This document shows, in pieces, positions 1-12,099 of a stretch of DNA of 32,000 nt. The first letter of the stretch is position 1; every line of letters starts with the position of its first letter. Both the position numbers and the translations under genes were made by a program. This DNA comes from Zygophlyctis sp. KS116 (lineage: Eukaryota; Fungi; Chytridiomycota), in NCBI GenBank assembly GCA_054661495.1, contig BAAFSQ010000042.1:1-32000 (forward strand), written 5' to 3'. Below the pieces are notes generated by a model, which saw nothing but the letters and a program-made list of their open reading frames with translations, searched no databases and was not told the origin of the DNA.

Positions 1-90
1 TAAAATTTAGTGCATTTTAGTAAAAAAAAAATTTAGATTTTCAGAAAATGAGGGCCAATGGTCCCACAGGAAAAATCGGACACACACACC

Positions 91-3000
91 TCATCCCTCA
101 AATTCTGGGCAATTGCGCTTTTGGGTCAAGTAGAAAATCAATTTCTCGGCCACATGATAGCTTGAGCTTTCAACTTGGTTTTTTTGACAGAATTTGTTCC
201 AGATTAGTAAGAGTTCTTCATCAGAAAAGTCTTCAAAAATAAAAGCCGACTCCTTCGGAAATCTACGCATTAAACCAGGATTTTGATTTCGAAGCATTTG
301 ATTGATTTGCTCGTCATAACCAATCAGAATGACTGAGATATCATCATTTTCAGTTCCTTGAACTTTTTCAACCAATACATCCAAAACTTGTTTGCCATAA
401 AGATTATCGTTTAGCGCATATGCTTCGTCAATTACTAGTACCTTTCCGCGGGCATTATCGATTATCGAATTAGCTTTTTTTTGAGATTCTCCAATGTACC
501 CACCAATAAAATCAGAGGCTGTTTTCAGAACCACGTCTCCAATTGAAAGGAAGTTCAGGTGCTTTAAAAGAGTTCCGTAAAATTCTGCAAATTTAGTCTT
601 TCCAGTTCCTGGATTTCCCAAAAATAACCGATTTAGATTCAGAGGCAACGTTGGCATTCCCTTCAGCTCTAATTCATAATTTTTCTCACTTATAGAAACC
701 AGTTCTTTCACACATTTTTTAATCTGCTTCCATCCAATCATACCATCAATATCTTTTAAAACTTTTTGAACCTTTTCGTTTTTCATTGGGTTGCATCCGG
801 CAACATCTTCCAAAACCAGCCTCATTTCGCCATGCCAGTCCGGACGAGCGCATGCCTTTCTGGTAGCTTGTTCAATCTTCTGCCTGACTGCTCTAGCGTT
901 ACCGAATCCTTTTCTATTGGCAAGTTTGCTCAACTTGCGAACAACAAGCTGCCCCACATTTTCATCTGCATTCCAACATTTTCGATTTAGCTCGTAATTC
1001 CAAATTTGTAGAAGTTCATTTTCATCAAAGTCGTCAAAGATAATACACTGGAAACGACTTTTCAGTCCTTCGTTGTATGCGAAAAGTTTGTTGGATATAT
1101 CATCTTCGTATCCAGCCAAAAAAATCGACAAATTCTTTCGTTCTTTTTCAGAAGCTACAAGAAGCTCAGAAATTATTGCTTTGCCTTGAGCATCTCCCGA
1201 AGGATCCAAATCGTATGCTTCGTCTATAAAAAATGTTCCACCGTGTGCTTGTTTTAATTGGTTTCTAAATTTAGCTGGCCCATTATCCTTCAACATTTGT
1301 GCAGAAGTTTCAGTAAAATCCGGTTTGGTCCTAAGTCCGCATTCACAAAGTATCTCTGCGAAAAGCCGTGCTGCAGTTGTTTTTCCTGTACCAGGATTCC
1401 CCAAAAAACAGAAATTTAGCTGAGGGAGATTTTCTTCACGTGCTTCAATCGGCATTTTCTTTAACGCTAATGATAATTTAAAGATTTCGAATGCAACTAT
1501 TTTAATTTTTTTCCATCCAATAAAATCCATAAGCTTATCCATAGACAAGGAATGTACATTTTCGGCCTTCTTGAAAAACGTCCATTGTTCTTTTGGAGAT
1601 AGATCCAAATCATTCCGACGTTGATTATCCTGAGGGTCACAAGGAACATTTTCTATCAACTGGAGTTCGTCTTCAGTGAGCCATTTCTCTCGCGCCAAAG
1701 GATATATTTTGGAAAATATTTTCAGTAAAGCTTTTTTATCTGTAGTAGTGTTTTGAGTATCATCTGAACCACGAGCTAGTGTTTTGAGTATCATCTGAAC
1801 CACGAGCAATCGCTACTAGCACCAATGGATGCAATTTGACGGCTTTTTTACAATAATTTCTGAAGTTCGTTCTCGCTTCATCTAATTGATTGTGCGCTAG
1901 GAGTTCCAGACAACGGATTAAGTCAAATTCTGGTTCCCTAAAAATTATCTGGTTTTTTTCGACAGTCTCAAGATATTTTAGACCAGCAAACATACGGATC
2001 GATTTTTCTTTCCTGAAATTTGAAAATCTTAATTTGGTCAGCAGCTCTTTCTCTATTGAAGGTTTGGAGCAGGAATTTAGAAACAACGACTTTCCGTTCC
2101 AATCTTCTGCCATAGGTGTTTTCAGATGCGATAATACTTTACGAGCTAAATGAAAATGTTCATTAGCCAGTGAAGAAGCCCGAGATATGCCTGGAAGTAT
2201 CAATTTGATATTTGAACTTATAGAAAGTGATTGATCCTGGCCAAGACCGTCCGGCATCAATTCCAGAAGTTTTAACATCTTTGCTTTGTCAGCCTTTATC
2301 AATATTGAGGGATAAATACAATACGGATCCCAAAAAACGAATGAACCTGAAGAAGACAAATTAACCGCATCAAAGCCTTTGGCCTCATACCATTGCAAAA
2401 CCCACCGAGAAACTTGAGTGATATAATCATTTTCAATTGGATTTCTAGATTTTTTTGTACCTTTCACATTTCGTTGGGCTTTCTTCGGTATGCCAGTTGG
2501 CTTCGGCATTCCAGTTGGATATTTAAGTAAATGAGCTGAATATCCATATCCAAAAATAATATTAACCAAACTTTTATCCGTTGGAAGCGAAACTAGTAGC
2601 TTTTCAAGGTTTTCCTTGCACCAAAAAAGAACTTCAATTCCGTTTAAGGAAGAAGGGGTAATATTTGTAGGCAACTTTATTTCTGTCTTATGCCGACCAG
2701 CAACCCAGAAACATGGGATATTCTGTGGAGATGCCTGGCATTTATACCATATATCGTCATCATTTGCAACAAGGCGACTAAGCAGATGAATCTTTTTTTG
2801 TATGAACTCTTCACCAAATTTGAAATCAGGCTCATGATATTCTATTTCTTCATTTTTTATGAATGAAACAATTTCATTCGGTATGGAAGGAAGAGCGTGT
2901 TTGATTTTATCGTTTGCTAGAGAATCTAGAGCCACGATTTCTTCGGTGATTGAGCACGTAGGACACGCATTTGGAATTCCATCTGAACAAATATTAAGCT

Positions 3001-6000
3001 TAAATGAATGATGATTTTTGGAGCATTTCCAATCCAAAATCTTGTCACAGCGAGGGATTTCTGGTGAATCACATGGCATATTGATAAGCGATCCGCAATT
3101 GGAAAAATTCCAGCACTGTTTTTCAGAATTAGTTCTGCATTGAAGAGAGATCTCACCATTCACATATTTTCTGTAATTTGAGCAAGATGTTGTAATTAAA
3201 TGGTTGCATTTCAATGGAAGCGATACTTCTTCCTGACAAGCTGCCAGCTGCATTCTACCATCTTTTGACTTGAATAATTCCTGAAAAGCAGTACCACATT
3301 CTGAAATCACATGATGCTCACATTCATCCCGAATAACAGTTATTTTTTCGATGCAATTTAATAACACGTCACTTTTTCCATCTTTAAGATTCATTTTAAT
3401 GGGAAGAAGAAAACTCTGAGCCATACTTGAGTCCAGAAAAAGGTTTTGTAGTTGATCATTTTTTAAATCCAGAGAATTCCAACAAGACATTGTTTCTATA
3501 TCTCTTTGATTGCAGGCTACATTCAAATTATGACCACACAATGGGCTACTTATTTGACAAAGTTTTAGGCAATCTCTTTTCATTATCTGGGCATCTTTAC
3601 ATGCCATTATCTCTTCATGACCACAAATTCTTACTACATTAACAGGTTTCGTACATAAAACCCCAAATTTACTGGCAGTAAATGTATCAACACCTTCCGT
3701 TACGCTGCTGATTACATGTGAGCTGTTAGATTCCAACAGTTTATCTATTCCAAGCTTGTTTTCACATTCAGTCCTTAGTAAGTGACGACAAGTTGGGTTT
3801 TTGATACTAATAATTTCTGAGCAAGGAAAAATATGAGAAGATCGTGAAAATGCATCATCACAACTCATTCTGACTTCATGGCCACAAAGTTTTTTAAGAA
3901 CGGAACTAACTTTGCATATATAATCAACAGGTCCGTAAGATTGTCCTTCCAAAACTCCATTTTCTGATACATTGCATGATCCGCCAGTCCAAGACTTCAA
4001 TTGGATGCTTTGCATGCATGGAACAGTTGCCTTGTGTCGACAACGAGGAAGAAGAATATCCACATTTTGAGGGCAGACAAAAGTACTAGGATCGAGCGTA
4101 AATTCATATTTTAAGAAACAATCCAGTGTCACAGAATGACCACAGGTTCCAATATATTGGCATTTTTGATTGCAAGGCGGAGGTTTTGTTTTTGAAGTGA
4201 GGTAATTCATGATCAAATGGCATGATCCGTGCAGCTCATGCTTGCAATCAGGATAAATATATGCCGTTAGAGACTTTTTTTGGCAAATAGGAATTAATGA
4301 CCGATCAGCAATGATTTTCTGATACTGCGAGCATGGTATTTTTATCCTATGCGTACACGGAAGTGTAAATTCTTCCTGGACGGAGCACGCAAGCGTCACA
4401 TCCGAACATTTAACTTTTTGGCTAGGATGTATCAGACATTCAGAAGGTAGCAGCTGATCACATCTATTTTTGTGTGTAAGACAAGGCCAATGGCACTTCA
4501 AGCCGCATGGGTGGCCACATTTCAAAATCGAGTCGCATTCCAGATGGCAAAACCCTGCTATAAGCTCGTCTGCCTTTTGAATTGATTTTATCTGCTTGGG
4601 GTGAGCTGGGCAATTAATCGGAAGAGATGAGTCCATGCGATTTTGCATAAACTCTTCGGTTTGAACCATATTTATATCATCGTGATCATCCGTTCTATCC
4701 ACAAAAGGCTGCTGAAATCTTTTCACAGTTTTTTGCCAATGCGATACTTGATTTCTGTCAAAATAAGCGGCATTTCCTACAATATACATACCGATCCGTG
4801 CTCTACTTAACAAAACAATCATTCTATTTTGGAGCTTAACAGAAGGTGTTTTAGATACCCCATCAATAACCAAAGATACAATTACAATGTCAGCCTCATC
4901 ACCTTGGAATCGATCAACTGTAGATAATCTGATTGAATCATTAGGATTGCCAATGAGCGTGAATGGTGGCTTTTTAAGCAAATTTCGTAGCAAAATCAAT
5001 TGACCTTTGTAAGGAGTAATTATAACAATAGATTGTTTAGGGACTCCATTATCAACTAGATATTTTGCAAGCTTACAGACCATATCACCTTCCACATTAT
5101 TAACTTTTGATAAACCAACTTTCGAATTTGTTTGTGCTCCTCCGTGACTCCAAAAAAAAACATCACATGCAATACCTGGAACATGCAGCCCACGCCCCGC
5201 AGATTTAGATAATATCGCAGATGTTCTTAAATTTGAATCCTGTCCAATCAATCGCTTAGTTACAAGTTTGTCATCTTTAATTTCTGTGATGCCAGAATAA
5301 AACGATCTAGTAAAATCACTGATTTCCTTTCGCATTCGACGCTGTATAGAAAGTACATGGTATGGAGCACATAATTCTTTCTGAGCTCTTATTAATCTTT
5401 CAAAAAGTGAACATTTAATTTTGTTGATTTTTTCAAACTCGTACTTCGAATTCACACTTGGCTGTAGTTGTAAATGATCACCTATCATTTCGAGCTTTAT
5501 TGTTGAGCTTCCAATACAAGAAAAAAGAATCGGCTCCAAAACTTCTGATGCTTCTTCAACCAGAATGGCGAAAGGATTAGTTCCTCTGATTGCATCCAAT
5601 CTAGAAACACATCCTACAATTGTACCGGCTATTACTGCTTTTCCTTCATAAACACCAGACCGACTTTGAATCAAGGCAATGTGATACTCCCGCTGCTTTT
5701 GCTTAAATGAAGTATCCAGCTGTTTGAAGCATTTCGGATATAATGATATAGCATATTCAATATATTTTCTTATAGCATTCAGTCTTTCCAAATGACCCAT
5801 ATCCCAATCCCATGAGTTCGGTAATTTAATTTCAGTTAGTTCCATTTCATTCGGCCCAACAATTTTGGAAAAGTGGGTTCTATCAGCGGGCTCCTCCATT
5901 ATCTCTTCAAATTCATAAACTTCAAAAATATCTCTTAAATGCTCGAAGTTGTCCTCTCCTTCCGAGTCTGCATCAGAACATTCTTGCTCATTTACAATTT

Positions 6001-9000
6001 CAATATCAGATCCTATAGATATGTCATCATCAACATTAATAATATCTATTGCATCTTCATAAATATGCTTATCAGAATCACTAAGAACGATATTATCAGC
6101 ATTTGGGGAATCTAATTCCTGACTAATTATTGAATTGTGCGAAGAAATATCTATTTCCAAAATGTTCATCCCATCCTTGCTATTAGAGTTACCATCTTTC
6201 AAACTATCATAATTTTTGTTATTTCCTAGCATTTGTTTATGATCGTTGCAATACAAAGAGCCTTCAATTCGATCCCCTTTACACGGTTTTCCTTTAGATG
6301 TAGTGGCAGAACATTTTCCATTCTGCGTAGACCTTAAATGTTCAATATGATTCACCTCCTGATGGTTGATACAATAAGGATTGTTCTGGGATTTTCCGCG
6401 ATCCCGACATTGGTCTCCTATTTGAGATTAGAAACACAAAAATAAGTACCTCGTCTTGTTTTTGCTTTGCAGCGGATAGGCTTATGATCATGGCAATAAG
6501 TTTGGAACGGCATTGCTAACTGTTGACAAATTATACCGTAATTATTATGAGACATACAAAGTATGTGATTTTCGCAAGTATTTCGGGGAGGATCATCAAG
6601 TGCGACTTCTGCAACTAATCCAGATTCCAAGCAGACCCAGCAAGCGTGCGAATCACAATATAATTGATTTATATCCAGAACTCGCGGTTGATCGCAGTCT
6701 GTCTCTTTACAGCTATGCTCAACGCAAAAACTTTTTCCTTCAGTTGCAGAATTCAAGCATTTTTTCATATTTACGCCATTTTCGAATTCACAAGAATGCA
6801 AAGCACAAAAAGGACCACCCACATCGGCGATTGTTAAACATTCACTATATGCACACTTTGGCGCAGGCTTAAAGTTTGTAATGAAGTTAAAAATAATTTC
6901 GGCTAAACTCATCGGGCCGACGTAGTGTTTAACACCATCAAAGAGCTTTTCTACTAAATGAACAGAAGAATTTCCCAGTACTTTTGCTACATTGAAACTG
7001 CTCGGTGGGTTATCATGTATTGAATCCATGAAGCCAACCCAAGATAATATTTTTGCCAAAGTATCCACATTTTCATAGACTGATTTGTTATCAAATGATT
7101 GTGACACCAAATCTTCTTCGTCCAAATAAAATCCTTTCAGCTTCATAAAAAAAGCTCCCAGACTTTCAATTTCCCCGTGAAGTACGTTAAGTTCTAAAGT
7201 AAAATTTCAATAATTACCCGTTCTCAACTTATGAACAAGGGGCAGTGATCTCCTCATCTTCTTTTCAGAGTATGCAGCTAATTTTGAATCTGGAGAATCC
7301 CCCATCCTAATCATCCGTACGAATGGCTCGGCCTTAATTAAATCAAGCAAAAACTCGTCTATAGCATGATTTTTGTAAGAAAGTATAAGAATCGGCGGCT
7401 CGCCAGCAGAGGGAGAAACTTTCATCCAAAGAGAACGAACAATTAAAAGTGCGCGAGCCATCACTACACCCACATACGACTTTCCAGTACCTGGCGGTCC
7501 CTGTGTACAGTGAACAGGATGCGTTATACATCCCATAAAACTGTCAAATTGTTCAGCATCCAAGTTAGCTTTTTGAACAAGTGCGGCCAAATTTCGAACG
7601 AGCTCCAATCGACAATGTGCATTTCGCCGAATTCTAATAATCTAACTATAAATTGAAGTTTTCTTACAGGATCTAACAGACTTTCATCCACCATCTTGGC
7701 AATCTTTTTTGTCACTTCATCAAATTCCATAATCTCAATATCATGATAAGTCAGCTCGAATGATGCATCATCAATTGAATCTTGATCCTCGACATTTTCG
7801 TCCTCGTATTCATTATCTTTTTCATCCTTATTTTGAAAATCTTCCTTTGAGCTATAGGGATGTGCTCCAATATTCAGATTATCAGCCAGGGGCAACCGGG
7901 AATATCTTTGATCTTCTATAGCCTTTAAAACAGGTATATATTCAGGCACAAATGTCTGACAGTCAATTATTGCAACATCAGCGCCAATATCTAACATGGT
8001 GCAATCATCAGCTAAATTGATGCCTTTTTCTAAGTAAACCTCCTTCAAGATTGTAACAACAACTTTCCCTTGTTCCCTTTTAGAAAATTCTGAAAAAGAG
8101 TCTGTATGAAAACCAATTTCAGCCCAAATAATTTTATCATTGAGCGAAAGGCCTGCTCCTCGGGTAGGCAGCATAACTAAACCAACCAAGTTGGAGCTCT
8201 TTAATCTAGATGTCGTTTTCCAGTGTATGCGCTCTGGAGGCCTTCGACTTTGTACGTTTTCAATGAAAATCCGATTATCAAAAGATTTTTTCACAATAAT
8301 CCCATCATAAATATGGCTGGAAGCCTTTGGTCCAGGAGGACCTTTTAAGTTGTTGCGAGTAACTTGGGCGCATTTCGAACAGAGGCCTTTTTCATGAAAC
8401 TTGTTTCCACAAACCAAAATCGCCTTTGAATCACATCCTTTACTTCGACAATCCCCGATAAAATCTCCTCCGTCAGCTCTCCACAAGAGACGACCACACT
8501 CTTTACCATGCTCCAATTGTTTGCAATGTGGAGAAATGATCGAATTACCATCACCAAAAGTCATTGCGACCCATACTTTTGTAATCGTATCAAAATATTC
8601 TGCGCTATCTGAATAGATTCCTCCGTATCTAGTATCAGGGCCCTTAAAGACAGGAAGCAGATTGGGTTGGAAATTTGTTAAATCCGATAACCATCCAATA
8701 GAACAATCTCTCCATTCTGTATACTTTGTAATCAGATTTTCTGTATCCTCTTGTATCTTATTGTACTTTATCACCCAAGGCTTTTCTAATTCATTTAAAA
8801 TATCTGTAATCTGCTTTTGCAAATTACGATGCTCCTGATTTTTAAAGGACAAAACTTGTGCAGCCTCTGCCAATGTAGCATTTAAGTGATATTTAACATC
8901 ACCTCTTTCTATATCCCATGTGATATTTAAAATACGTTTGACAGTATCTAGCACAATTTCTACTGGTTTTACGAGCGCATCATTTTGTAATCCAATCGAC

Positions 9001-9463
9001 TTGACACTATTTTCAACAAACAATATCAAAGTATTTGATACATTTTGAATTGACAGTGATCGCAGCTCTTCATTAGAAGACACAGGAAACTTTGCTAAAG
9101 CCAAGATCAAAATCTCCAAATCCTTCAAAGAGATATTTTTCGGATTAGCCCAACAATCATGCCACTCCTTTTTAAATTTCACTATAATAGCCGGTAGCTT
9201 TGATGGAACAATCAAGGATTTTCTCAAGGCTGGTAAGAGTACTTTACCATTACTTTTCTGATCTTTCTGATCTTTTTGATCTTTCTGATCATTTGCATTC
9301 CGAGAAACTATTTCTTTAAAATGTATAAAGTACAATTATTCTTCTTCAAAACATGCGAATATTTGCATTTAGAACCAAACTTGCACGTCCCAGTCTTTGA
9401 ATACTCATTACAGGTTTTAGAATTATTCCTTTTAGCATTAATTGATTGATATTACCGATTCAT
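91..9463 (-). CDS. Giant ZNFX1/Upf1-like SF1 helicase fused to CCCH finger, Zn-finger arrays, PARP-like segment and tandem CbbX/SpoVK AAA+ domains (~3070 aa; frameshifted by a 31-nt duplication, possibly a pseudogene)
   Basis: Exons 9463-9456, 9428-9334, 9307-7668, 7641-7218, 7193-6450, 6417-91. GT-AG introns 9429-9455 (27 nt), 9308-9333 (26), 7642-7667 (26), 7194-7217 (24), 6418-6449 (32) join the ORF-track pieces in frame. Motifs: C-x8-C-x5-C-x3-H (CNEYSKTGTCKFGSKCKYSH); SF1 motifs QGPPGTGKS, SYKNHAID, VEEASE, IGDHLQL, QRRM, TVDRFQGDEAD, VLLSRAR; repeated LxCGH/CxH NFX1-like fingers; two GNPGTGKT ... IDEAY ... GY AAA+ modules. Frame break at 1746-1807. Confidence 0.85.
1746..1807. repeat. 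Perfect 2 x 31-nt tandem duplication inside the helicase-AAA gene
   Basis: TAGTGTTTTGAGTATCATCTGAACCACGAGC at 1746-1776 and 1777-1807. ARGSDDTQNT appears at the end of ORF 1760..6355 and again at the start of ORF 91..1809. Confidence 0.97.
9255..9290 (-). repeat. 9-nt coding repeat, (DQK)x4
   Basis: GATCARAAA-type unit four times, encoding DQKDQKDQKDQK just after the CCCH finger. Confidence 0.85.
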
Positions 9464-9982: not shown

Positions 9983-10162
9983 CTAATATTTTCTTGTAAA
10001 TTTCCTACAAACGAACACATGATGTGAAAAGCATATCATCAGCTGACTATTGGGAACGGATGTAAACCTGTCCGCAACGATCATACATAATTGTTTATCT
10101 AGTATTATAATTGAGATTTGGTATCTAGAGCAGACAGAATAAGGGTAGTGTTAAGATTTGAA

Positions 10163-12099
10163 ATGTTTGCAAGAATCAGATCGTTTTCTACTCTGCCAAA
10201 AGAGTCTGCGTTTATGGGATTGTCTGGCGGACAAATATTTCATGAGATGATGTTGAGGCATGATGTTAAAGTCATCTTTGGTTATCCAGGAGGTGCGATC
10301 TTGCCAGTTTATGACGCAATTTATGAGTCAAATTACTTTGATTTTGTGTTGCCTCGGGTAGGATTAAAAATACTGATAAATAGCATGAACAGGGTGCTGG
10401 GCATATGGCTGAAGGTTATGCGAGAGTAACGGGAAAACCTGGGGTGGTTTTGGTGACTTCTGGGCCTGGTGCCACAAATATGATTACGCCAATGCAAGAT
10501 GCGCTCTCTGATGGGCTTCCAATGGTGGTCTTTTGTGGTCAGGTACCAACTACAGCAATTGGTACTGATGCTTTTCAAGAAGCTGATGTTATTGGGATTT
10601 CTAGATCTTGTACAAAATGGAATGTTATGGTAAAGGATACGTCAGAGTTACCAAGGAGGATCAATGAAGCTTTTGAGATTGCTACAAGTGGACGTCCAGG
10701 TCCAGTTTTGGTTGATTTACCAAAGGATGTTACAGCTGGAGTTTTAAGAAAGAAGATTGTAGGTGGGATAGATGCGTTTATTCCTGGAAAAAAGCGAGAA
10801 CAAGATTCAATTTCCTCTGCAACAATGAGTGCATTGCTTAAAACTGCAAATGCTATAAATAATGCTCAAAGTCCTATTTTGTATGTTGGCGCTGGTATAC
10901 TTTATTCTCCTGAAGGACCATCTTTGCTTAAAGCTTTGGCTGATAAGGGGAATATTCCAGTTACAACAACTTTGCAAGGCTTGGGTGCGTTTGATGAATT
11001 GGATCCAAAGTCTTTACATATGTTGGGAATGCACGGAAGTGCTTATGCAAATTTAGCTATGCAAACTGCTGACGTTATTGTTGCCTTAGGAGCCAGATTT
11101 GATGATCGTGTAACTGGTAATCTCAAAAGTATGTATTTTGGTTTAAATATTTAGAATTCGCTCCTGCAGCTAGAAGAGCGGCATTGGTTAAAAAAGGAGG
11201 GATATTTCAGTTTGAAATTGCACCAAAGAATATCAATAAGGTTGTGCAGGTTGATACTGCTATTGAAGGAGATGTGGCTAAAAATTTGAAGCATTTGATT
11301 CCAATGATTGAATCAAAACCACGCTCGAGATGGTTTGCCCAACTAAATGAATGGAAACAAAAATATCCATTCACTTACACCCCATCTCTTCCAGGAGCTA
11401 TTCTTAAGCCTCAAGAAGTCATCGAGGAGTTGAATAGACAAACTGAAGGGATGAAGGATAATGTTATTATCACTACTGGTGTCGGGCAACATCAAATGTG
11501 GGCTGCGCAATACTTTAGGTAAATTTCGAATTTTAATAATGTAGATGGCGAAGTCCACTTTCCTTTGTAACTTCTGGAGGACTTGGAACTATGGGTTTTG
11601 GATTGCCTGCGGCTATTGGAGCAAAAACGGCATTTCCTAACAAAATTGTAGTTGATATTGATGGGGATGCATCATTTTCAATGACTGGTATGGAATTGAT
11701 GACAGCCAGACAGCACAATATTGGAGTCAAGGTCCTTATCTTGAACAATGATTTCCAGGGAATGGTAATTTTTTAATATAACTTTAGGTAAAACAATGGC
11801 AAGATCTCTTTTATGATAAAAGATATTCTGGAACAACAATGAAAAATCCTGATTTTGTTAAATTTGCAGAGTCAATGAATTGTAAGGGGCTCAGGGCCAG
11901 TACAAAAGAAGAACTACCTTCAGTGATGGCAGAGTTTTTGGCGACAGATGAGCCTGTTGTGCTCGATGCTAAAGTTGATAAACGTGAGCACGTATTTCCA
12001 ATGGTGCCTGCTGGTATGGGATTACATGAAATGGAGTTGGGAGAGACAAAGCTGCACGAGCCCAATCACAAATTTACAAACTCATTCATGGCGCCATAA
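10163..12099 (+). CDS. ILV2: Acetolactate synthase catalytic subunit, mitochondrial
   Basis: [12 protein letters not shown]|[51 protein letters not shown] motif. Introns 10358-10383, 11129-11154, 11519-11544 (26 nt each) and 11765-11787 (23 nt). Confidence 0.96.

What the first reader, a model, noticed from the sequence alone, without database searches (positions are those of the whole stretch)
91..9463. ~3070-aa candidate RNA-sensing/immune mega-protein: CCCH + ZNFX1-like helicase + Zn arrays + PARP-like + AAA+
Seen: five ORF-track fragments plus two tiny 5' exons join through 24-32-nt introns, and removal of one repeat copy, into one polypeptide. Domain order is CCCH finger, helical region, Cys/His cluster, SF1 helicase, NFX1-like fingers, PARP-like segment, two CbbX/SpoVK AAA+ modules. 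Known: ZNFX1 helicases act in dsRNA sensing and small-RNA pathways; CCCH plus inactive PARP is the architecture of the antiviral protein ZAP/PARP13; fungi have NFX1-helicase/CbbX-AAA fusions of unknown function. Inference: this is a single-chain sensor-oligomeriser-effector of RNA-directed defence, in a domain combination I do not recognise as described.
Basis: partly seen in the sequence, partly recalled or inferred. Interest (0 to 1): 0.8.

Follow-up and report, generated by a model that had tools for sequence, protein, structure and literature searches.

The report
Broken giant ZNFX1-like helicase–AAA+ gene
This chytrid gene belongs to a widespread but unstudied family of giant proteins that join an antiviral-type RNA helicase (ZNFX1-like) to an inactive PARP-like domain and a row of AAA+ motors. 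In this genome the copy is broken by a transposon and by a 31-base duplication.

Summary
The exon model and domain order are real. Five introns of 24-32 nt, all starting GTA, join the ORF pieces. Four full-length homologues (3,000-3,700 aa) align colinearly over window 9251-70.

Confirmed:
- a CCCH finger;
- an SF1 helicase whose best solved relative is human ZNFX1;
- a Cys-rich finger arm;
- a PARP fold without the H-Y-E triad (VIA Z 9.4; all top Foldseek hits are PARPs);
- SpoVK/CbbX/EccA-clade AAA+ modules.

Corrections:
- The 3' end is not natural. Window 114-1 is the end of a dispersed repeat, which supplies the last 7 codons and the stop.
- The rest of lid 2, a third AAA+ module and the tail lie on contig C89 of the same genome. 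The flanks join in frame, so the intact protein was about 3,500 aa.
- The 31-nt duplication is real but missing in two other metagenome populations.

The architecture is conserved in chytrids, oomycetes, plasmodiophorids, dinoflagellates, diplonemids, Mastigamoeba and cnidarians. All members are annotated hypothetical. One paper mentions the helicase-AAA+ fusion in passing.

A defence or RNA-surveillance role is inferred, not shown, and no RNA data exist. An RZ-like finger rests on motif spacing only. The scan has no note of this family on other DNA, only sub-notes on this window.

The parts
9456..9463 (-). Exon 1 (ATG plus 5 nt)
   Evidence: Reading. It joins exon 2 in frame after the 27-nt intron.
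9429..9455 (-). Intron 1, 27 nt, GTA..AAG
9334..9428 (-). Exon 2: one C-x8-C-x5-C-x3-H (CCCH) zinc finger
   Evidence: Pfam zf-CCCH PF00642, E 2.7e-10
9308..9333 (-). Intron 2, 26 nt, GTA..TAG
7668..9307 (-). Exon 3: family-specific N-terminal domain of about 546 aa. It contains an invariant Cys/His cluster at about 8370-8527.
   Evidence: Alignment A3 of 9 homologues has 44% mean column identity and invariant C261..C312. No Pfam or PDB hit. The Atlas feature search points to ZNFX1 PF25396 clusters at 0.88, which is only a lead.
7642..7667 (-). Intron 3, 26 nt, GTA..TAG
   Evidence: An HSP break falls here.
7218..7641 (-). Exon 4: first part of the helicase RecA1 domain, with Walker A (GPPGTGKS) at 7477-7500
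   Evidence: Pfam AAA_11, E 2.6e-8; sequence
7194..7217 (-). Intron 4, 24 nt, GTA..TAG
6205..7193 (-). Cys/His-rich insertion inside RecA1 (exon 5 plus the start of exon 6). It holds repeats of C-x6-7-G-x2-C-x9-[FY]C-x2-H and includes intron 5 at 6418-6449.
   Evidence: No Pfam family. Homologues also have an insert of about 600 aa between the two halves of AAA_11.
6418..6449 (-). Intron 5, 32 nt, GTA..TAG
   Evidence: Strain X4 carries a +1 C inside it.
5831..6178 (-). Acidic low-complexity stretch within the helicase insertion
   Evidence: Translation. The comparison with the acidic autoinhibitory plug of human ZNFX1 is inference only.
4712..5722 (-). Helicase motifs II-VI (end of RecA1 plus RecA2)
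   Evidence: Pfam AAA_11 and AAA_12, E 7.9e-31. Best PDB match is ZNFX1 9q9z_A, E 4.5e-26.
3032..4633 (-). Cys/His finger arm (NFX1/CHCC-like)
   Evidence: 29% identity over 651 aa to P0001, which carries PF26600 and PF26601. The ZNFX1 PDB alignment runs to residue 676.
2954..3031 (-). Terminal finger W-x-C-x4-H-x6-C-x7-C-x2-C, RZ-like by ligand spacing
   Evidence: The Cys/His residues are invariant in 13 homologues. The spacing is compared with human ZNFX1 C1849/H1853/C1860/C1869/C1872. Pfam, PDB profile and fold searches do not confirm it.
2279..2890 (-). PARP-like (pseudo-PARP) domain
   Evidence: AF2 model with pLDDT 78. All top Foldseek hits are PARP catalytic domains. VIA Z 9.4-8.6 to SRO1, RCD1, tankyrase and PARP10/12/14/15. 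The nearest Atlas models are PARP or inactive SRO. hhalign against real PARPs gives E 0.0016. No H-Y-E triad.
1808..2278 (-). Conserved helical linker ending in the motif AHPL..LA.AR
   Evidence: Alignment A1; helices in the model
1746..1807 (-). 31-nt tandem duplication (two copies) that shifts the frame ahead of the AAA+ region
   Evidence: Sequence. X3 has a junction unitig. X6 and X7 show single-copy paths.
775..1542 (-). AAA+ module 1 (SpoVK/CbbX/EccA clade)
   Evidence: Pfam AAA and AAA_lid_6; NCBIfam; PDB EccA1, E 8e-22
115..774 (-). AAA+ module 2, cut off inside its lid
   Evidence: PDB CbbX, E 5e-25. Homologues continue past this point.
1..114 (-). Terminus of a dispersed repeat or transposon. 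It supplies 7 codons and the TGA at 91-93.
   Evidence: Copies at 82-97% identity on contigs C649, C784, C617, C995, C715 and C89 all start at the same base. The X3 unitig ends exactly 30 nt into it.

Best explanation
The locus is a disrupted copy of a conserved, uncharacterised eukaryotic gene family.

Shown:
- One gene of about 3,500 aa once ran in this order: CCCH RNA-binding finger, a family-specific N-domain, a ZNFX1-type UPF1-like SF1 helicase with a Zn-rich and acidic insertion in RecA1, a long Cys/His finger arm, a PARP-fold domain lacking the NAD+ triad, a helical linker, and three tandem SpoVK/CbbX/EccA-clade AAA+ modules with a tail.
- In this genome a 31-nt tandem duplication shifts the frame before the AAA+ part.
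- A transposon-like repeat has inserted in the lid of module 2, separating module 3 and the tail onto contig C89.

Inferred mechanism of the intact protein:
- The CCCH finger and the helicase load on single-stranded RNA, as in ZNFX1.
- The acidic insert may autoinhibit the helicase.
- The rigid finger arm ends in an RZ-like finger whose invariant Cys sits where ZNFX1 has its ubiquitin-accepting Cys. That finger may act as an effector.
- The pseudo-PARP serves as a binding or regulatory module.
- Three AAA+ modules per chain would give a six-module ring in a dimer. The ring would act as an ATP-driven remodeller or as an ATP-gated switch, as in RNF213.
- The likely task is surveillance of foreign or aberrant RNA (virus or transposon).

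The copy here probably makes at most a truncated protein without working AAA+ modules.
For: - Gene model and colinearity.
- ZNFX1 is the best solved relative.
- The AAA+ clade assignment rests.
- PARP fold.
- Relatives with a true Pfam PARP domain C-terminal to a ZNFX1-like helicase.
- The same architecture occurs in 3,000-3,700-aa proteins of chytrids, Plasmodiophora, Spongospora, Saprolegnia and Mastigamoeba. It also occurs in Phytophthora, Symbiodinium, Diplonema, Chromera, Hydra and Clytia.
- Most members have three Walker A motifs about 260 aa apart and the RZ-like motif.
- Repeat boundary at 114.
- The continuation on C89 joins in frame as R-N-F-P-H-F-G-N-A-G, with the same length as in homologues.
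- Other evidence: loss-type variants segregate in nature; there are 17 synonymous to 23 non-synonymous differences; and the gene is single-copy in the assembly.
Against: - No RNA data exist for this organism, so expression, splicing and the fate of the duplication are unknown.
- The RZ-like finger is not recognised by PF20173, by a PDB profile search or by fold search. It also lacks the general-base His.
- The Z-RING/Miz E2-binding domain was not tested.
- The N-domain shows no sequence match to the ZNFX1 ARM domain.
- The left flank of the repeat on C89 is unrelated DNA. The two contigs therefore cannot simply be abutted. A mis-join inside the repeat or a real rearrangement cannot be told apart.
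- Nothing tests an immune role.
Confidence: 0.5

Rival explanations
1. The family is a housekeeping RNA-processing or RNP-assembly chaperone, or a small-RNA pathway helicase like Hrr1 or C. elegans ZNFX-1. It is not an immune sensor. The AAA+ modules would act as a narrow-substrate chaperone, as in CbbX, SpoVK and EccA.
For: [quoted passage not shown] The gene is single-copy with housekeeping neighbours. The family is old and wide in eukaryotes.
Against: Frameshifting and insertion alleles segregate in natural populations, and the ratio of 23 non-synonymous to 17 synonymous differences suggests weak constraint. Among the lineages returned here the distribution is patchy. CCCH plus a pseudo-PARP recalls antiviral ZAP-type proteins.
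Confidence: 0.3
2. The copy in this genome still works. The duplication would be spliced out as a new 25- or 28-nt intron, which restores the frame. The repeat at the 3' end would be an assembly or haplotype artefact, so a full-length protein is made.
For: GT..AG candidates of 25 nt (1800-1776) and 28 nt (1803-1776) both restore the frame. The junction unitig depth of 109 against 131-146 allows a minority single-copy allele. The C89 part has open frames.
Against: All seven clear introns of this gene start GTA and are AT-rich. The candidates start GTT or GTG. The gene-to-repeat junction is crossed at full depth by the X3 unitig. No uninterrupted copy exists in the assembly.
Confidence: 0.2
3. 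Two or more adjacent genes (a helicase/finger gene and an AAA+ gene) have been mistaken for one.
For: The frame break lies exactly between the linker and the AAA+ part. Prokaryote-style gene callers split the homologous locus L001 into seven genes.
Against: Predicted proteins of many species, and complete ORFs from transcriptome assemblies, contain helicase plus AAA+ in one chain. No start codon or intergenic spacer exists at the break. The single-copy form in X6 and X7 is in frame.
Confidence: 0.05

Closest known systems
[quoted passage not shown]
   Same: It is the best solved relative of the helicase. Both have a UPF1-like SF1 core with a large insertion in RecA1, followed by a long Cys/His finger arm. 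The terminal finger has the same ligand spacing as the RZ finger, including the Cys at the catalytic position.
   Different: No PF25396, ARM or PF20173 match. The general-base His is missing. The Z-RING was not tested. This family adds an N-terminal CCCH finger, a pseudo-PARP and three AAA+ modules. Its members run to about 3,500 aa against 1,918 aa.
Eukaryotic SF1-helicase fusions of the SpoVK-EccA-like AAA+ clade (mentioned in PMC11513918)
   Same: The fusion of an SF1 RNA helicase to CbbX-like AAA+ modules is the same, and the gene is very probably a member.
   Different: As far as the text shows, the paper gives one sentence and a figure entry. It does not describe the ZNFX1 link, the finger arm, the RZ-like finger or the PARP-like domain, and it reports no function.
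RNF213
   Same: Both are giant proteins that combine AAA+ modules with, possibly, an RZ-type finger. In RNF213, ATP binding to the AAA core switches on the E3 activity.
   Different: RNF213 has six dynein-like AAA modules and no helicase. Here there are three CbbX-type modules. No sequence or fold match was found.
ZAP/PARP13 and PARP12
   Same: Both combine a CCCH finger with a PARP-fold domain without the full triad in one chain.
   Different: Here there is a single CCCH finger, and the Pfam scans found no WWE domain. The resemblance is by analogy only. The closest folds are plant SRO/RCD1 and tankyrase.
Pseudo-PARPs (plant RCD1/SRO, TASOR)
   Same: They share a PARP fold without catalytic residues that is used as an interaction module. 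SRO1 and RCD1 are top VIA hits and TASOR is a Foldseek hit.
   Different: There is no sequence-level relation, and the partner domains differ.

Membership tests
ZNFX1-type helicases | UPF1-like SF1 helicase core closest to ZNFX1 | tested here: met
   Pfam AAA_11 and AAA_12. The best PDB match is 9q9z_A ZNFX1, E 4.5e-26, ahead of aquarius and UPF1.
ZNFX1-type helicases | Array of NFX1/CHCC-type zinc fingers after the helicase | tested here: met
   Homologues aligned over the array carry PF26600 and PF26601. The local Pfam copy gave no finger family for the window itself.
ZNFX1-type helicases | N-terminal ARM / ZNFX1 domain (PF25396) | tested here: inconclusive
   No Pfam or PDB hit, even with profile A3. 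The nearest Atlas feature clusters carry PF25396 at 0.88.
ZNFX1-type helicases | RZ finger (PF20173) with catalytic Cys and His | tested here: inconclusive
   The ligand spacing and the invariant Cys match. There is no HMM hit, no PDB profile hit, no fold hit, and no His at the base position.
ZNFX1-type helicases | Z-RING / Miz-like E2-binding domain | not tested
SpoVK-EccA-like AAA+ clade (CbbX, SpoVK, EccA) | Classical AAA+ module with Walker A and B and AAA_lid_6, closest to CbbX, SpoVK or EccA | tested here: met
   PF00004 twice in the window plus once on C89, with AAA_lid_6. TIGR02881, TIGR02880 and TIGR03922 give E 1e-75 to 2e-57 but fall below their equivalog cut-offs. PDB CbbX and EccA1.
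SpoVK-EccA-like AAA+ clade (CbbX, SpoVK, EccA) | Eukaryotic subgroup: fusion to an SF1 RNA helicase | tested here: met
   Colinear gene. The description is in PMC11513918.
PARP / ARTD | PARP catalytic fold | tested here: met
   All top Foldseek hits are PARPs at E about 0.01. VIA Z 9.4, with about 150 residues aligned at about 4 Å. Atlas.
PARP / ARTD | Sequence-profile membership (PF00644) | tested here: not met
   No Pfam hit. hhalign against real PARPs gives only 16% probability, E 0.0016.
PARP / ARTD | H-Y-E (or H-Y-x) NAD+-binding triad | tested here: not met
   In alignment A1, with the register from hhalign, there is no conserved His, Tyr or Glu at the expected strands. No structural superposition was available.
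ZAP/PARP13-like | Several N-terminal CCCH fingers plus WWE plus PARP | tested here: not met
   One CCCH finger only. No WWE family appeared in any Pfam scan.
RNF213 | Six dynein-like AAA modules plus an E3 shell | tested here: not met
   The AAA+ modules are CbbX-type. No RNF213 sequence was matched.

The most novel reading that the evidence does not exclude
The intact family would be an ATP-gated, RNA-activated transthiolating E3 machine. It would combine the ZNFX1 helicase and RZ-type finger with an AAA+ ring, in which two chains of three modules form a hexamer. It would also carry a pseudo-PARP reader. That would make it a mechanistic and evolutionary bridge between ZNFX1 and RNF213, working in antiviral or anti-transposon defence of protists, early fungi and cnidarians.
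Probability: 0.15. Interest if true: 0.85.

Novelty: new variant of a known kind. Interest (0 to 1): 0.55.

Why it matters
In 2025-26 ZNFX1 and RNF213 emerged as unusual E3 ligases that mark RNA or lipids, each gated by a nucleotide-driven motor. The family described here puts a ZNFX1-type helicase, a possible RZ-type finger, a pseudo-PARP and AAA+ motors in one chain, and it occurs across many eukaryotic lineages. It offers a natural experiment on how such modules are combined. It also suggests a candidate ancient RNA-surveillance system outside animals.

The locus itself shows the gene being lost in a wild chytrid population through a transposon and a duplication. That fits a dispensable, conflict-type gene.

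Tried and rejected
- RNA evidence: no RNA run holds the stretch, so splicing and expression could not be tested.
- RZ finger: PF20173 gave nothing on the segment or on the whole genome. Profile A2 against PDB sequences gave only a chance hit. The AF2 model (pLDDT 83) had no fold match (Foldseek E > 1, VIA best Z 3.2).
- N-terminal domain: no hit as a single sequence or as profile A3 in PDB or Pfam.
- Pfam zf-NF-X1 and PARP models do not hit the window pieces.
- I first read the TGA at 91 as the natural stop and the protein as having two AAA+ modules. I rejected that.
- I first mapped 'TLNG' and 'GYGY' onto the PARP His and Tyr motifs. hhalign gives another register. Either way the triad is absent.
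- Simple abutment of C42 and C89 is rejected. The repeat copy at C89:310-419 is only 95% identical and has an unrelated left flank.
- Seven literature searches found no paper on the family beyond one sentence in PMC11513918.
- The exon structure of C89 between 3826 and 4005 stays unresolved.
Full report
ORGANISM AND METHOD. Earlier notes of this scan call the genome a freshwater chytrid. The closest homologues found here are from Chytridiales (Nowakowskiella, Chytriomyces, Rhizoclosmatium), which fits. The assembly is small, 12.7 Mb in 1,175 contigs, and the window is the first 32 kb of contig C42. Every search used a single exon or ORF piece by reference.

GENE MODEL. All five long ORFs lie on the minus strand. 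Enumerating GT..AG introns that join neighbouring frames without stops gave one short AT-rich candidate starting GTA at each junction:
- 7667-7642 (26 nt)
- 7217-7194 (24 nt)
- 6449-6418 (32 nt)

Reading the 5' end gives ATG at 9463. It also gives intron 1 at 9455-9429 (27 nt), a 95-nt exon that encodes a CCCH finger, and intron 2 at 9333-9308 (26 nt).

Three things support the model:
- The 6449/6418 splice rebuilds a repeated C-x6-7-G-x2-C-x9-[FY]C-x2-H motif across the junction.
- A metagenome strain (X4) has a one-base insertion inside that intron.
- tblastn with four full-length homologues (Nowakowskiella, Chytriomyces, Gaertneriomyces, Plasmodiophora) is colinear from 9251 to 70. HSP breaks fall at the frame-changing introns 3 and 5 and at the duplication.

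With one copy of the 31-nt repeat, the exons from 9463 to 115 total 9,183 nt, exactly 3,061 codons.

THE 31-NT DUPLICATION. Positions 1746-1776 and 1777-1807 are identical, and 31 is not a multiple of three. In run X3, a possible source of this DNA, a 60-nt unitig spans the copy junction at depth 109. The flanks have depth 131-146, and the repeat 31-mer has depth 220. The duplication is therefore in the reads and is not an assembler slip.

In two independent freshwater metagenomes the contigs pass straight through a single copy. X7 shows a joint from 1745 to 1777. X6 has a loose end that matches the left flank. The single-copy form is in frame and fits the homologues.

Two GT..AG candidates of 25 and 28 nt would also restore the frame. 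They start GTT and GTG. All seven clear introns of this gene, five here and two on C89, start GTA. I put efficient splicing at about 0.2-0.3. Without RNA it cannot be decided.

THE 3' END IS NOT NATURAL. ORF5 ends in '...KRNCPEFEG' followed by a stop. The closest homologues run on through 'RN(L)PNFGNAG' into the rest of the lid. In Rhizoclosmatium they continue into a third AAA+ module and a tail.

Window 114-1 matches at least six other places in the genome at 82-97% identity. Every copy begins at the same base with AATTGCCCAG. The X3 unitig that leaves the gene ends at window 85. Its last 31-mer therefore holds one gene base plus 30 repeat bases, which is what a k=31 graph gives at the edge of a shared repeat. 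Seven codons and the TGA thus come from a dispersed repeat.

The missing part is on contig C89 of the same genome:
- C89:2776-3174, 3262-3744 and 4009-4323 match the Rhizoclosmatium C-terminus at 49%, 42% and 36% identity.
- The stretch starts with '...NNFPHFGNAGVVETLF'.
- It carries a third AAA+ module (Pfam AAA E 1.3e-16, plus AAA_lid_6).
- C89:2709-2785 is itself repeated on other contigs and ends in ...GAATAATT. It has a weak inverted match to the left terminus.

Counting the AATT once, the two flanks join as CGC AAT TTT CCT CAT TTT GGG. This is in frame and has the same length as the homologues' R-N-L-P-N-F-G. I take this as strong evidence that one gene of roughly 3,500 aa was split by an insertion of about 2.5 kb or more.

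One caveat remains. The left repeat end on C89 (310-419) is only 95% identical to that on C42 and is flanked by unrelated DNA. C89 is therefore either mis-joined inside the repeat or reflects recombination between copies. The exon structure of C89 between 3826 and 4005 is unresolved.

DOMAINS.
- CCCH finger: PF00642, E 2.7e-10.
- N-domain (exon 3): strongly conserved among nine homologues, with an invariant Cys/His cluster. No Pfam or PDB match, even as a profile. The Atlas feature search points to ZNFX1-domain clusters at 0.88, which is only a lead.
- Helicase: AAA_11 is split by an insertion of about 600 aa, and AAA_12 follows. The same split is seen in homologues. The best solved relative is human ZNFX1, E 4.5e-26, ahead of aquarius and UPF1. 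The insertion holds a Cys/His repeat cluster and a long acidic stretch. Human ZNFX1 has an expanded 1C domain with a '1Z' insertion and an acidic plug helix that blocks the RNA groove. The parallel is an inference.
- Finger arm: 29% identity over 651 aa to P0001, whose precomputed Pfam families are zf-CHCC_shd and zf-CHCC_ins. Most family members carry them.
- Terminal finger: W-x-C-x(3-4)-H-x6-C-x7-C-P-x-C is invariant in 13 sequences. A regular expression finds it in most members. Human ZNFX1's RZ finger uses C1849, H1853, C1869 and C1872 for zinc, with C1860 as the ubiquitin-accepting Cys. That is the same spacing but for one residue. PF20173, a PDB profile search and two fold searches give nothing, and the base His is missing. 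It stays a hypothesis.
- PARP-like domain: an AF2 model built from 17 sequences has pLDDT 78. All top Foldseek hits are PARP catalytic domains plus the TASOR pseudo-PARP (E 0.008-0.03). VIA gives Z 9.4-8.6 over model residues 7-210 against wheat SRO1, RCD1, tankyrases and PARP10/12/14/15. The nearest ESM Atlas models are PARP or inactive SRO proteins. Three environmental relatives carry a true PF00644 PARP domain C-terminal to a ZNFX1-like helicase. hhalign of my alignment against them gives E 0.0016 at 16% probability, matching 'GYDAV' to 'FDSV' and 'VFWDPY..YP..LI' to 'IVYDRTQVYPEYLV'. No conserved His, Tyr or Glu sits at the triad positions.
- AAA+ modules: SpoVK, CbbX and EccA models hit at E 1e-75 to 2e-57 with two stretches each, below the equivalog cut-offs. 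PDB matches are CbbX and EccA1. Walker A and B are intact in all three modules.

FAMILY AND LITERATURE. A library-wide HMMER search with the PARP-like and linker segment found 16 cluster representatives. Nine of them are 2,750-3,670 aa long. The named representatives and cluster members come from four chytrids, Plasmodiophora, Spongospora, Saprolegnia and Mastigamoeba. All but two are named hypothetical or merely 'AAA+ ATPase domain-containing'.

A word-based search with the helicase region adds Phytophthora, Symbiodinium, Diplonema, Chromera, diatoms (with CCCH), Hydra, Clytia and Andalucia. It also finds shorter Dikarya forms (about 2,300 aa) in which my motif scan found no RZ-like finger. 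Complete ORFs from transcriptome assemblies contain helicase plus AAA+ in one chain. A 13.4-kb contig from another organism (L001) shows the same order, including CCCH.

The only published mention I found is in PMC11513918. [quoted passage not shown] Recent ZNFX1 work supplies the mechanistic frame:
- an RNA-activated helicase;
- a rigid finger stalk;
- a Z-RING/Miz domain plus an RZ finger acting as E3, with RNA ubiquitylation;
- the remark that RZ-type E3s are gated by an ATP-dependent module, as in RNF213.

POPULATION SIGNALS AND CONTEXT. In this assembly the helicase, the PARP-like part and the AAA+ region are single-copy. Neighbours are ordinary genes: a TPP enzyme, TMEM120, a HAD hydrolase, an MFS transporter and Iml2/TTC39. 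Of 40 listed single-base differences in related metagenome strains, 17 are synonymous and 23 are not. That indicates purifying selection, but a weak one. Beside the duplication and the insertion, X6 shows a 28-nt deletion at about 6276 in a low-depth contig. Taken together, the gene looks dispensable in nature.

VERDICT. The end of the gene, the number of AAA+ modules and the intactness of this copy are corrected. The family is real, wide and essentially unstudied. A defence or RNA-surveillance function, an E3 activity and a ring formed by two chains are inferences still to be tested.

Noticed in passing
window 1-114; L023 (G000:C89) 310-2785: Dispersed repeat with termini AATTGCCCAG... and ...GAATAATT, a weak terminal inverted match and a possible AATT target duplication. 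The C89 copy holds ORFs with a transposase-like '...ESYHAQIK' motif. The family and its autonomy were not determined.
   Followed up: partly
window 1746-1807: The 31-nt tandem duplication could act as a new 25- or 28-nt intron. It is absent in two other metagenome populations. Because the unit length equals the k-mer size, single-copy alleles in the source sample can be judged only by depth (109 against 131-146).
   Followed up: partly
window ~6276-6303 and 6440: Strain X6 shows a 28-nt frameshifting deletion in the Cys-cluster exon, in one contig at depth 3.7. Strain X4 shows a +1 C inside intron 5.
   Followed up: no
window 6205-7146: About six repeats of C-x6-7-G-x2-C-x9-[FY]C-x2-H sit inside the helicase RecA1 domain. 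There is no Pfam family. They may be the counterpart of the '1Z' insertion of human ZNFX1.
   Followed up: no
L023 (G000:C89) 4200-4329: The C-terminal tail ends in a conserved C..GY.W......GGW.C.GG.H motif, in the tail segment that matches the Rhizoclosmatium homologue at 36% identity. There is no Pfam family.
   Followed up: no
whole gene and L023: All seven clear introns are 24-32 nt long and start GTA. As far as I know that is unusually short for a fungus.
   Followed up: no
L001 (Logan contig, 13,386 nt): A homologous locus in another, unidentified organism has the same order: CCCH, helicase, CHCC fingers, several AAA+ modules. Its introns are about 50-120 nt.
   Followed up: partly
P0102, P0112, P0137: Environmental ZNFX1-like helicases carry a genuine Pfam PARP domain at the C-terminus. 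One has a canonical H-Y-E-type motif. They may represent the ancestral state of the pseudo-PARP.
   Followed up: partly
L023 (G000:C89) 1-420: The left flank of the repeat on C89 is unrelated to the gene. Contig C89 may be chimeric inside the repeat, or two repeat copies may have recombined.
   Followed up: no
window 10118-11154 (+): A divergently oriented thiamine-pyrophosphate enzyme gene starts about 650 nt upstream of the ATG, so the two genes may share a promoter region.
   Followed up: no
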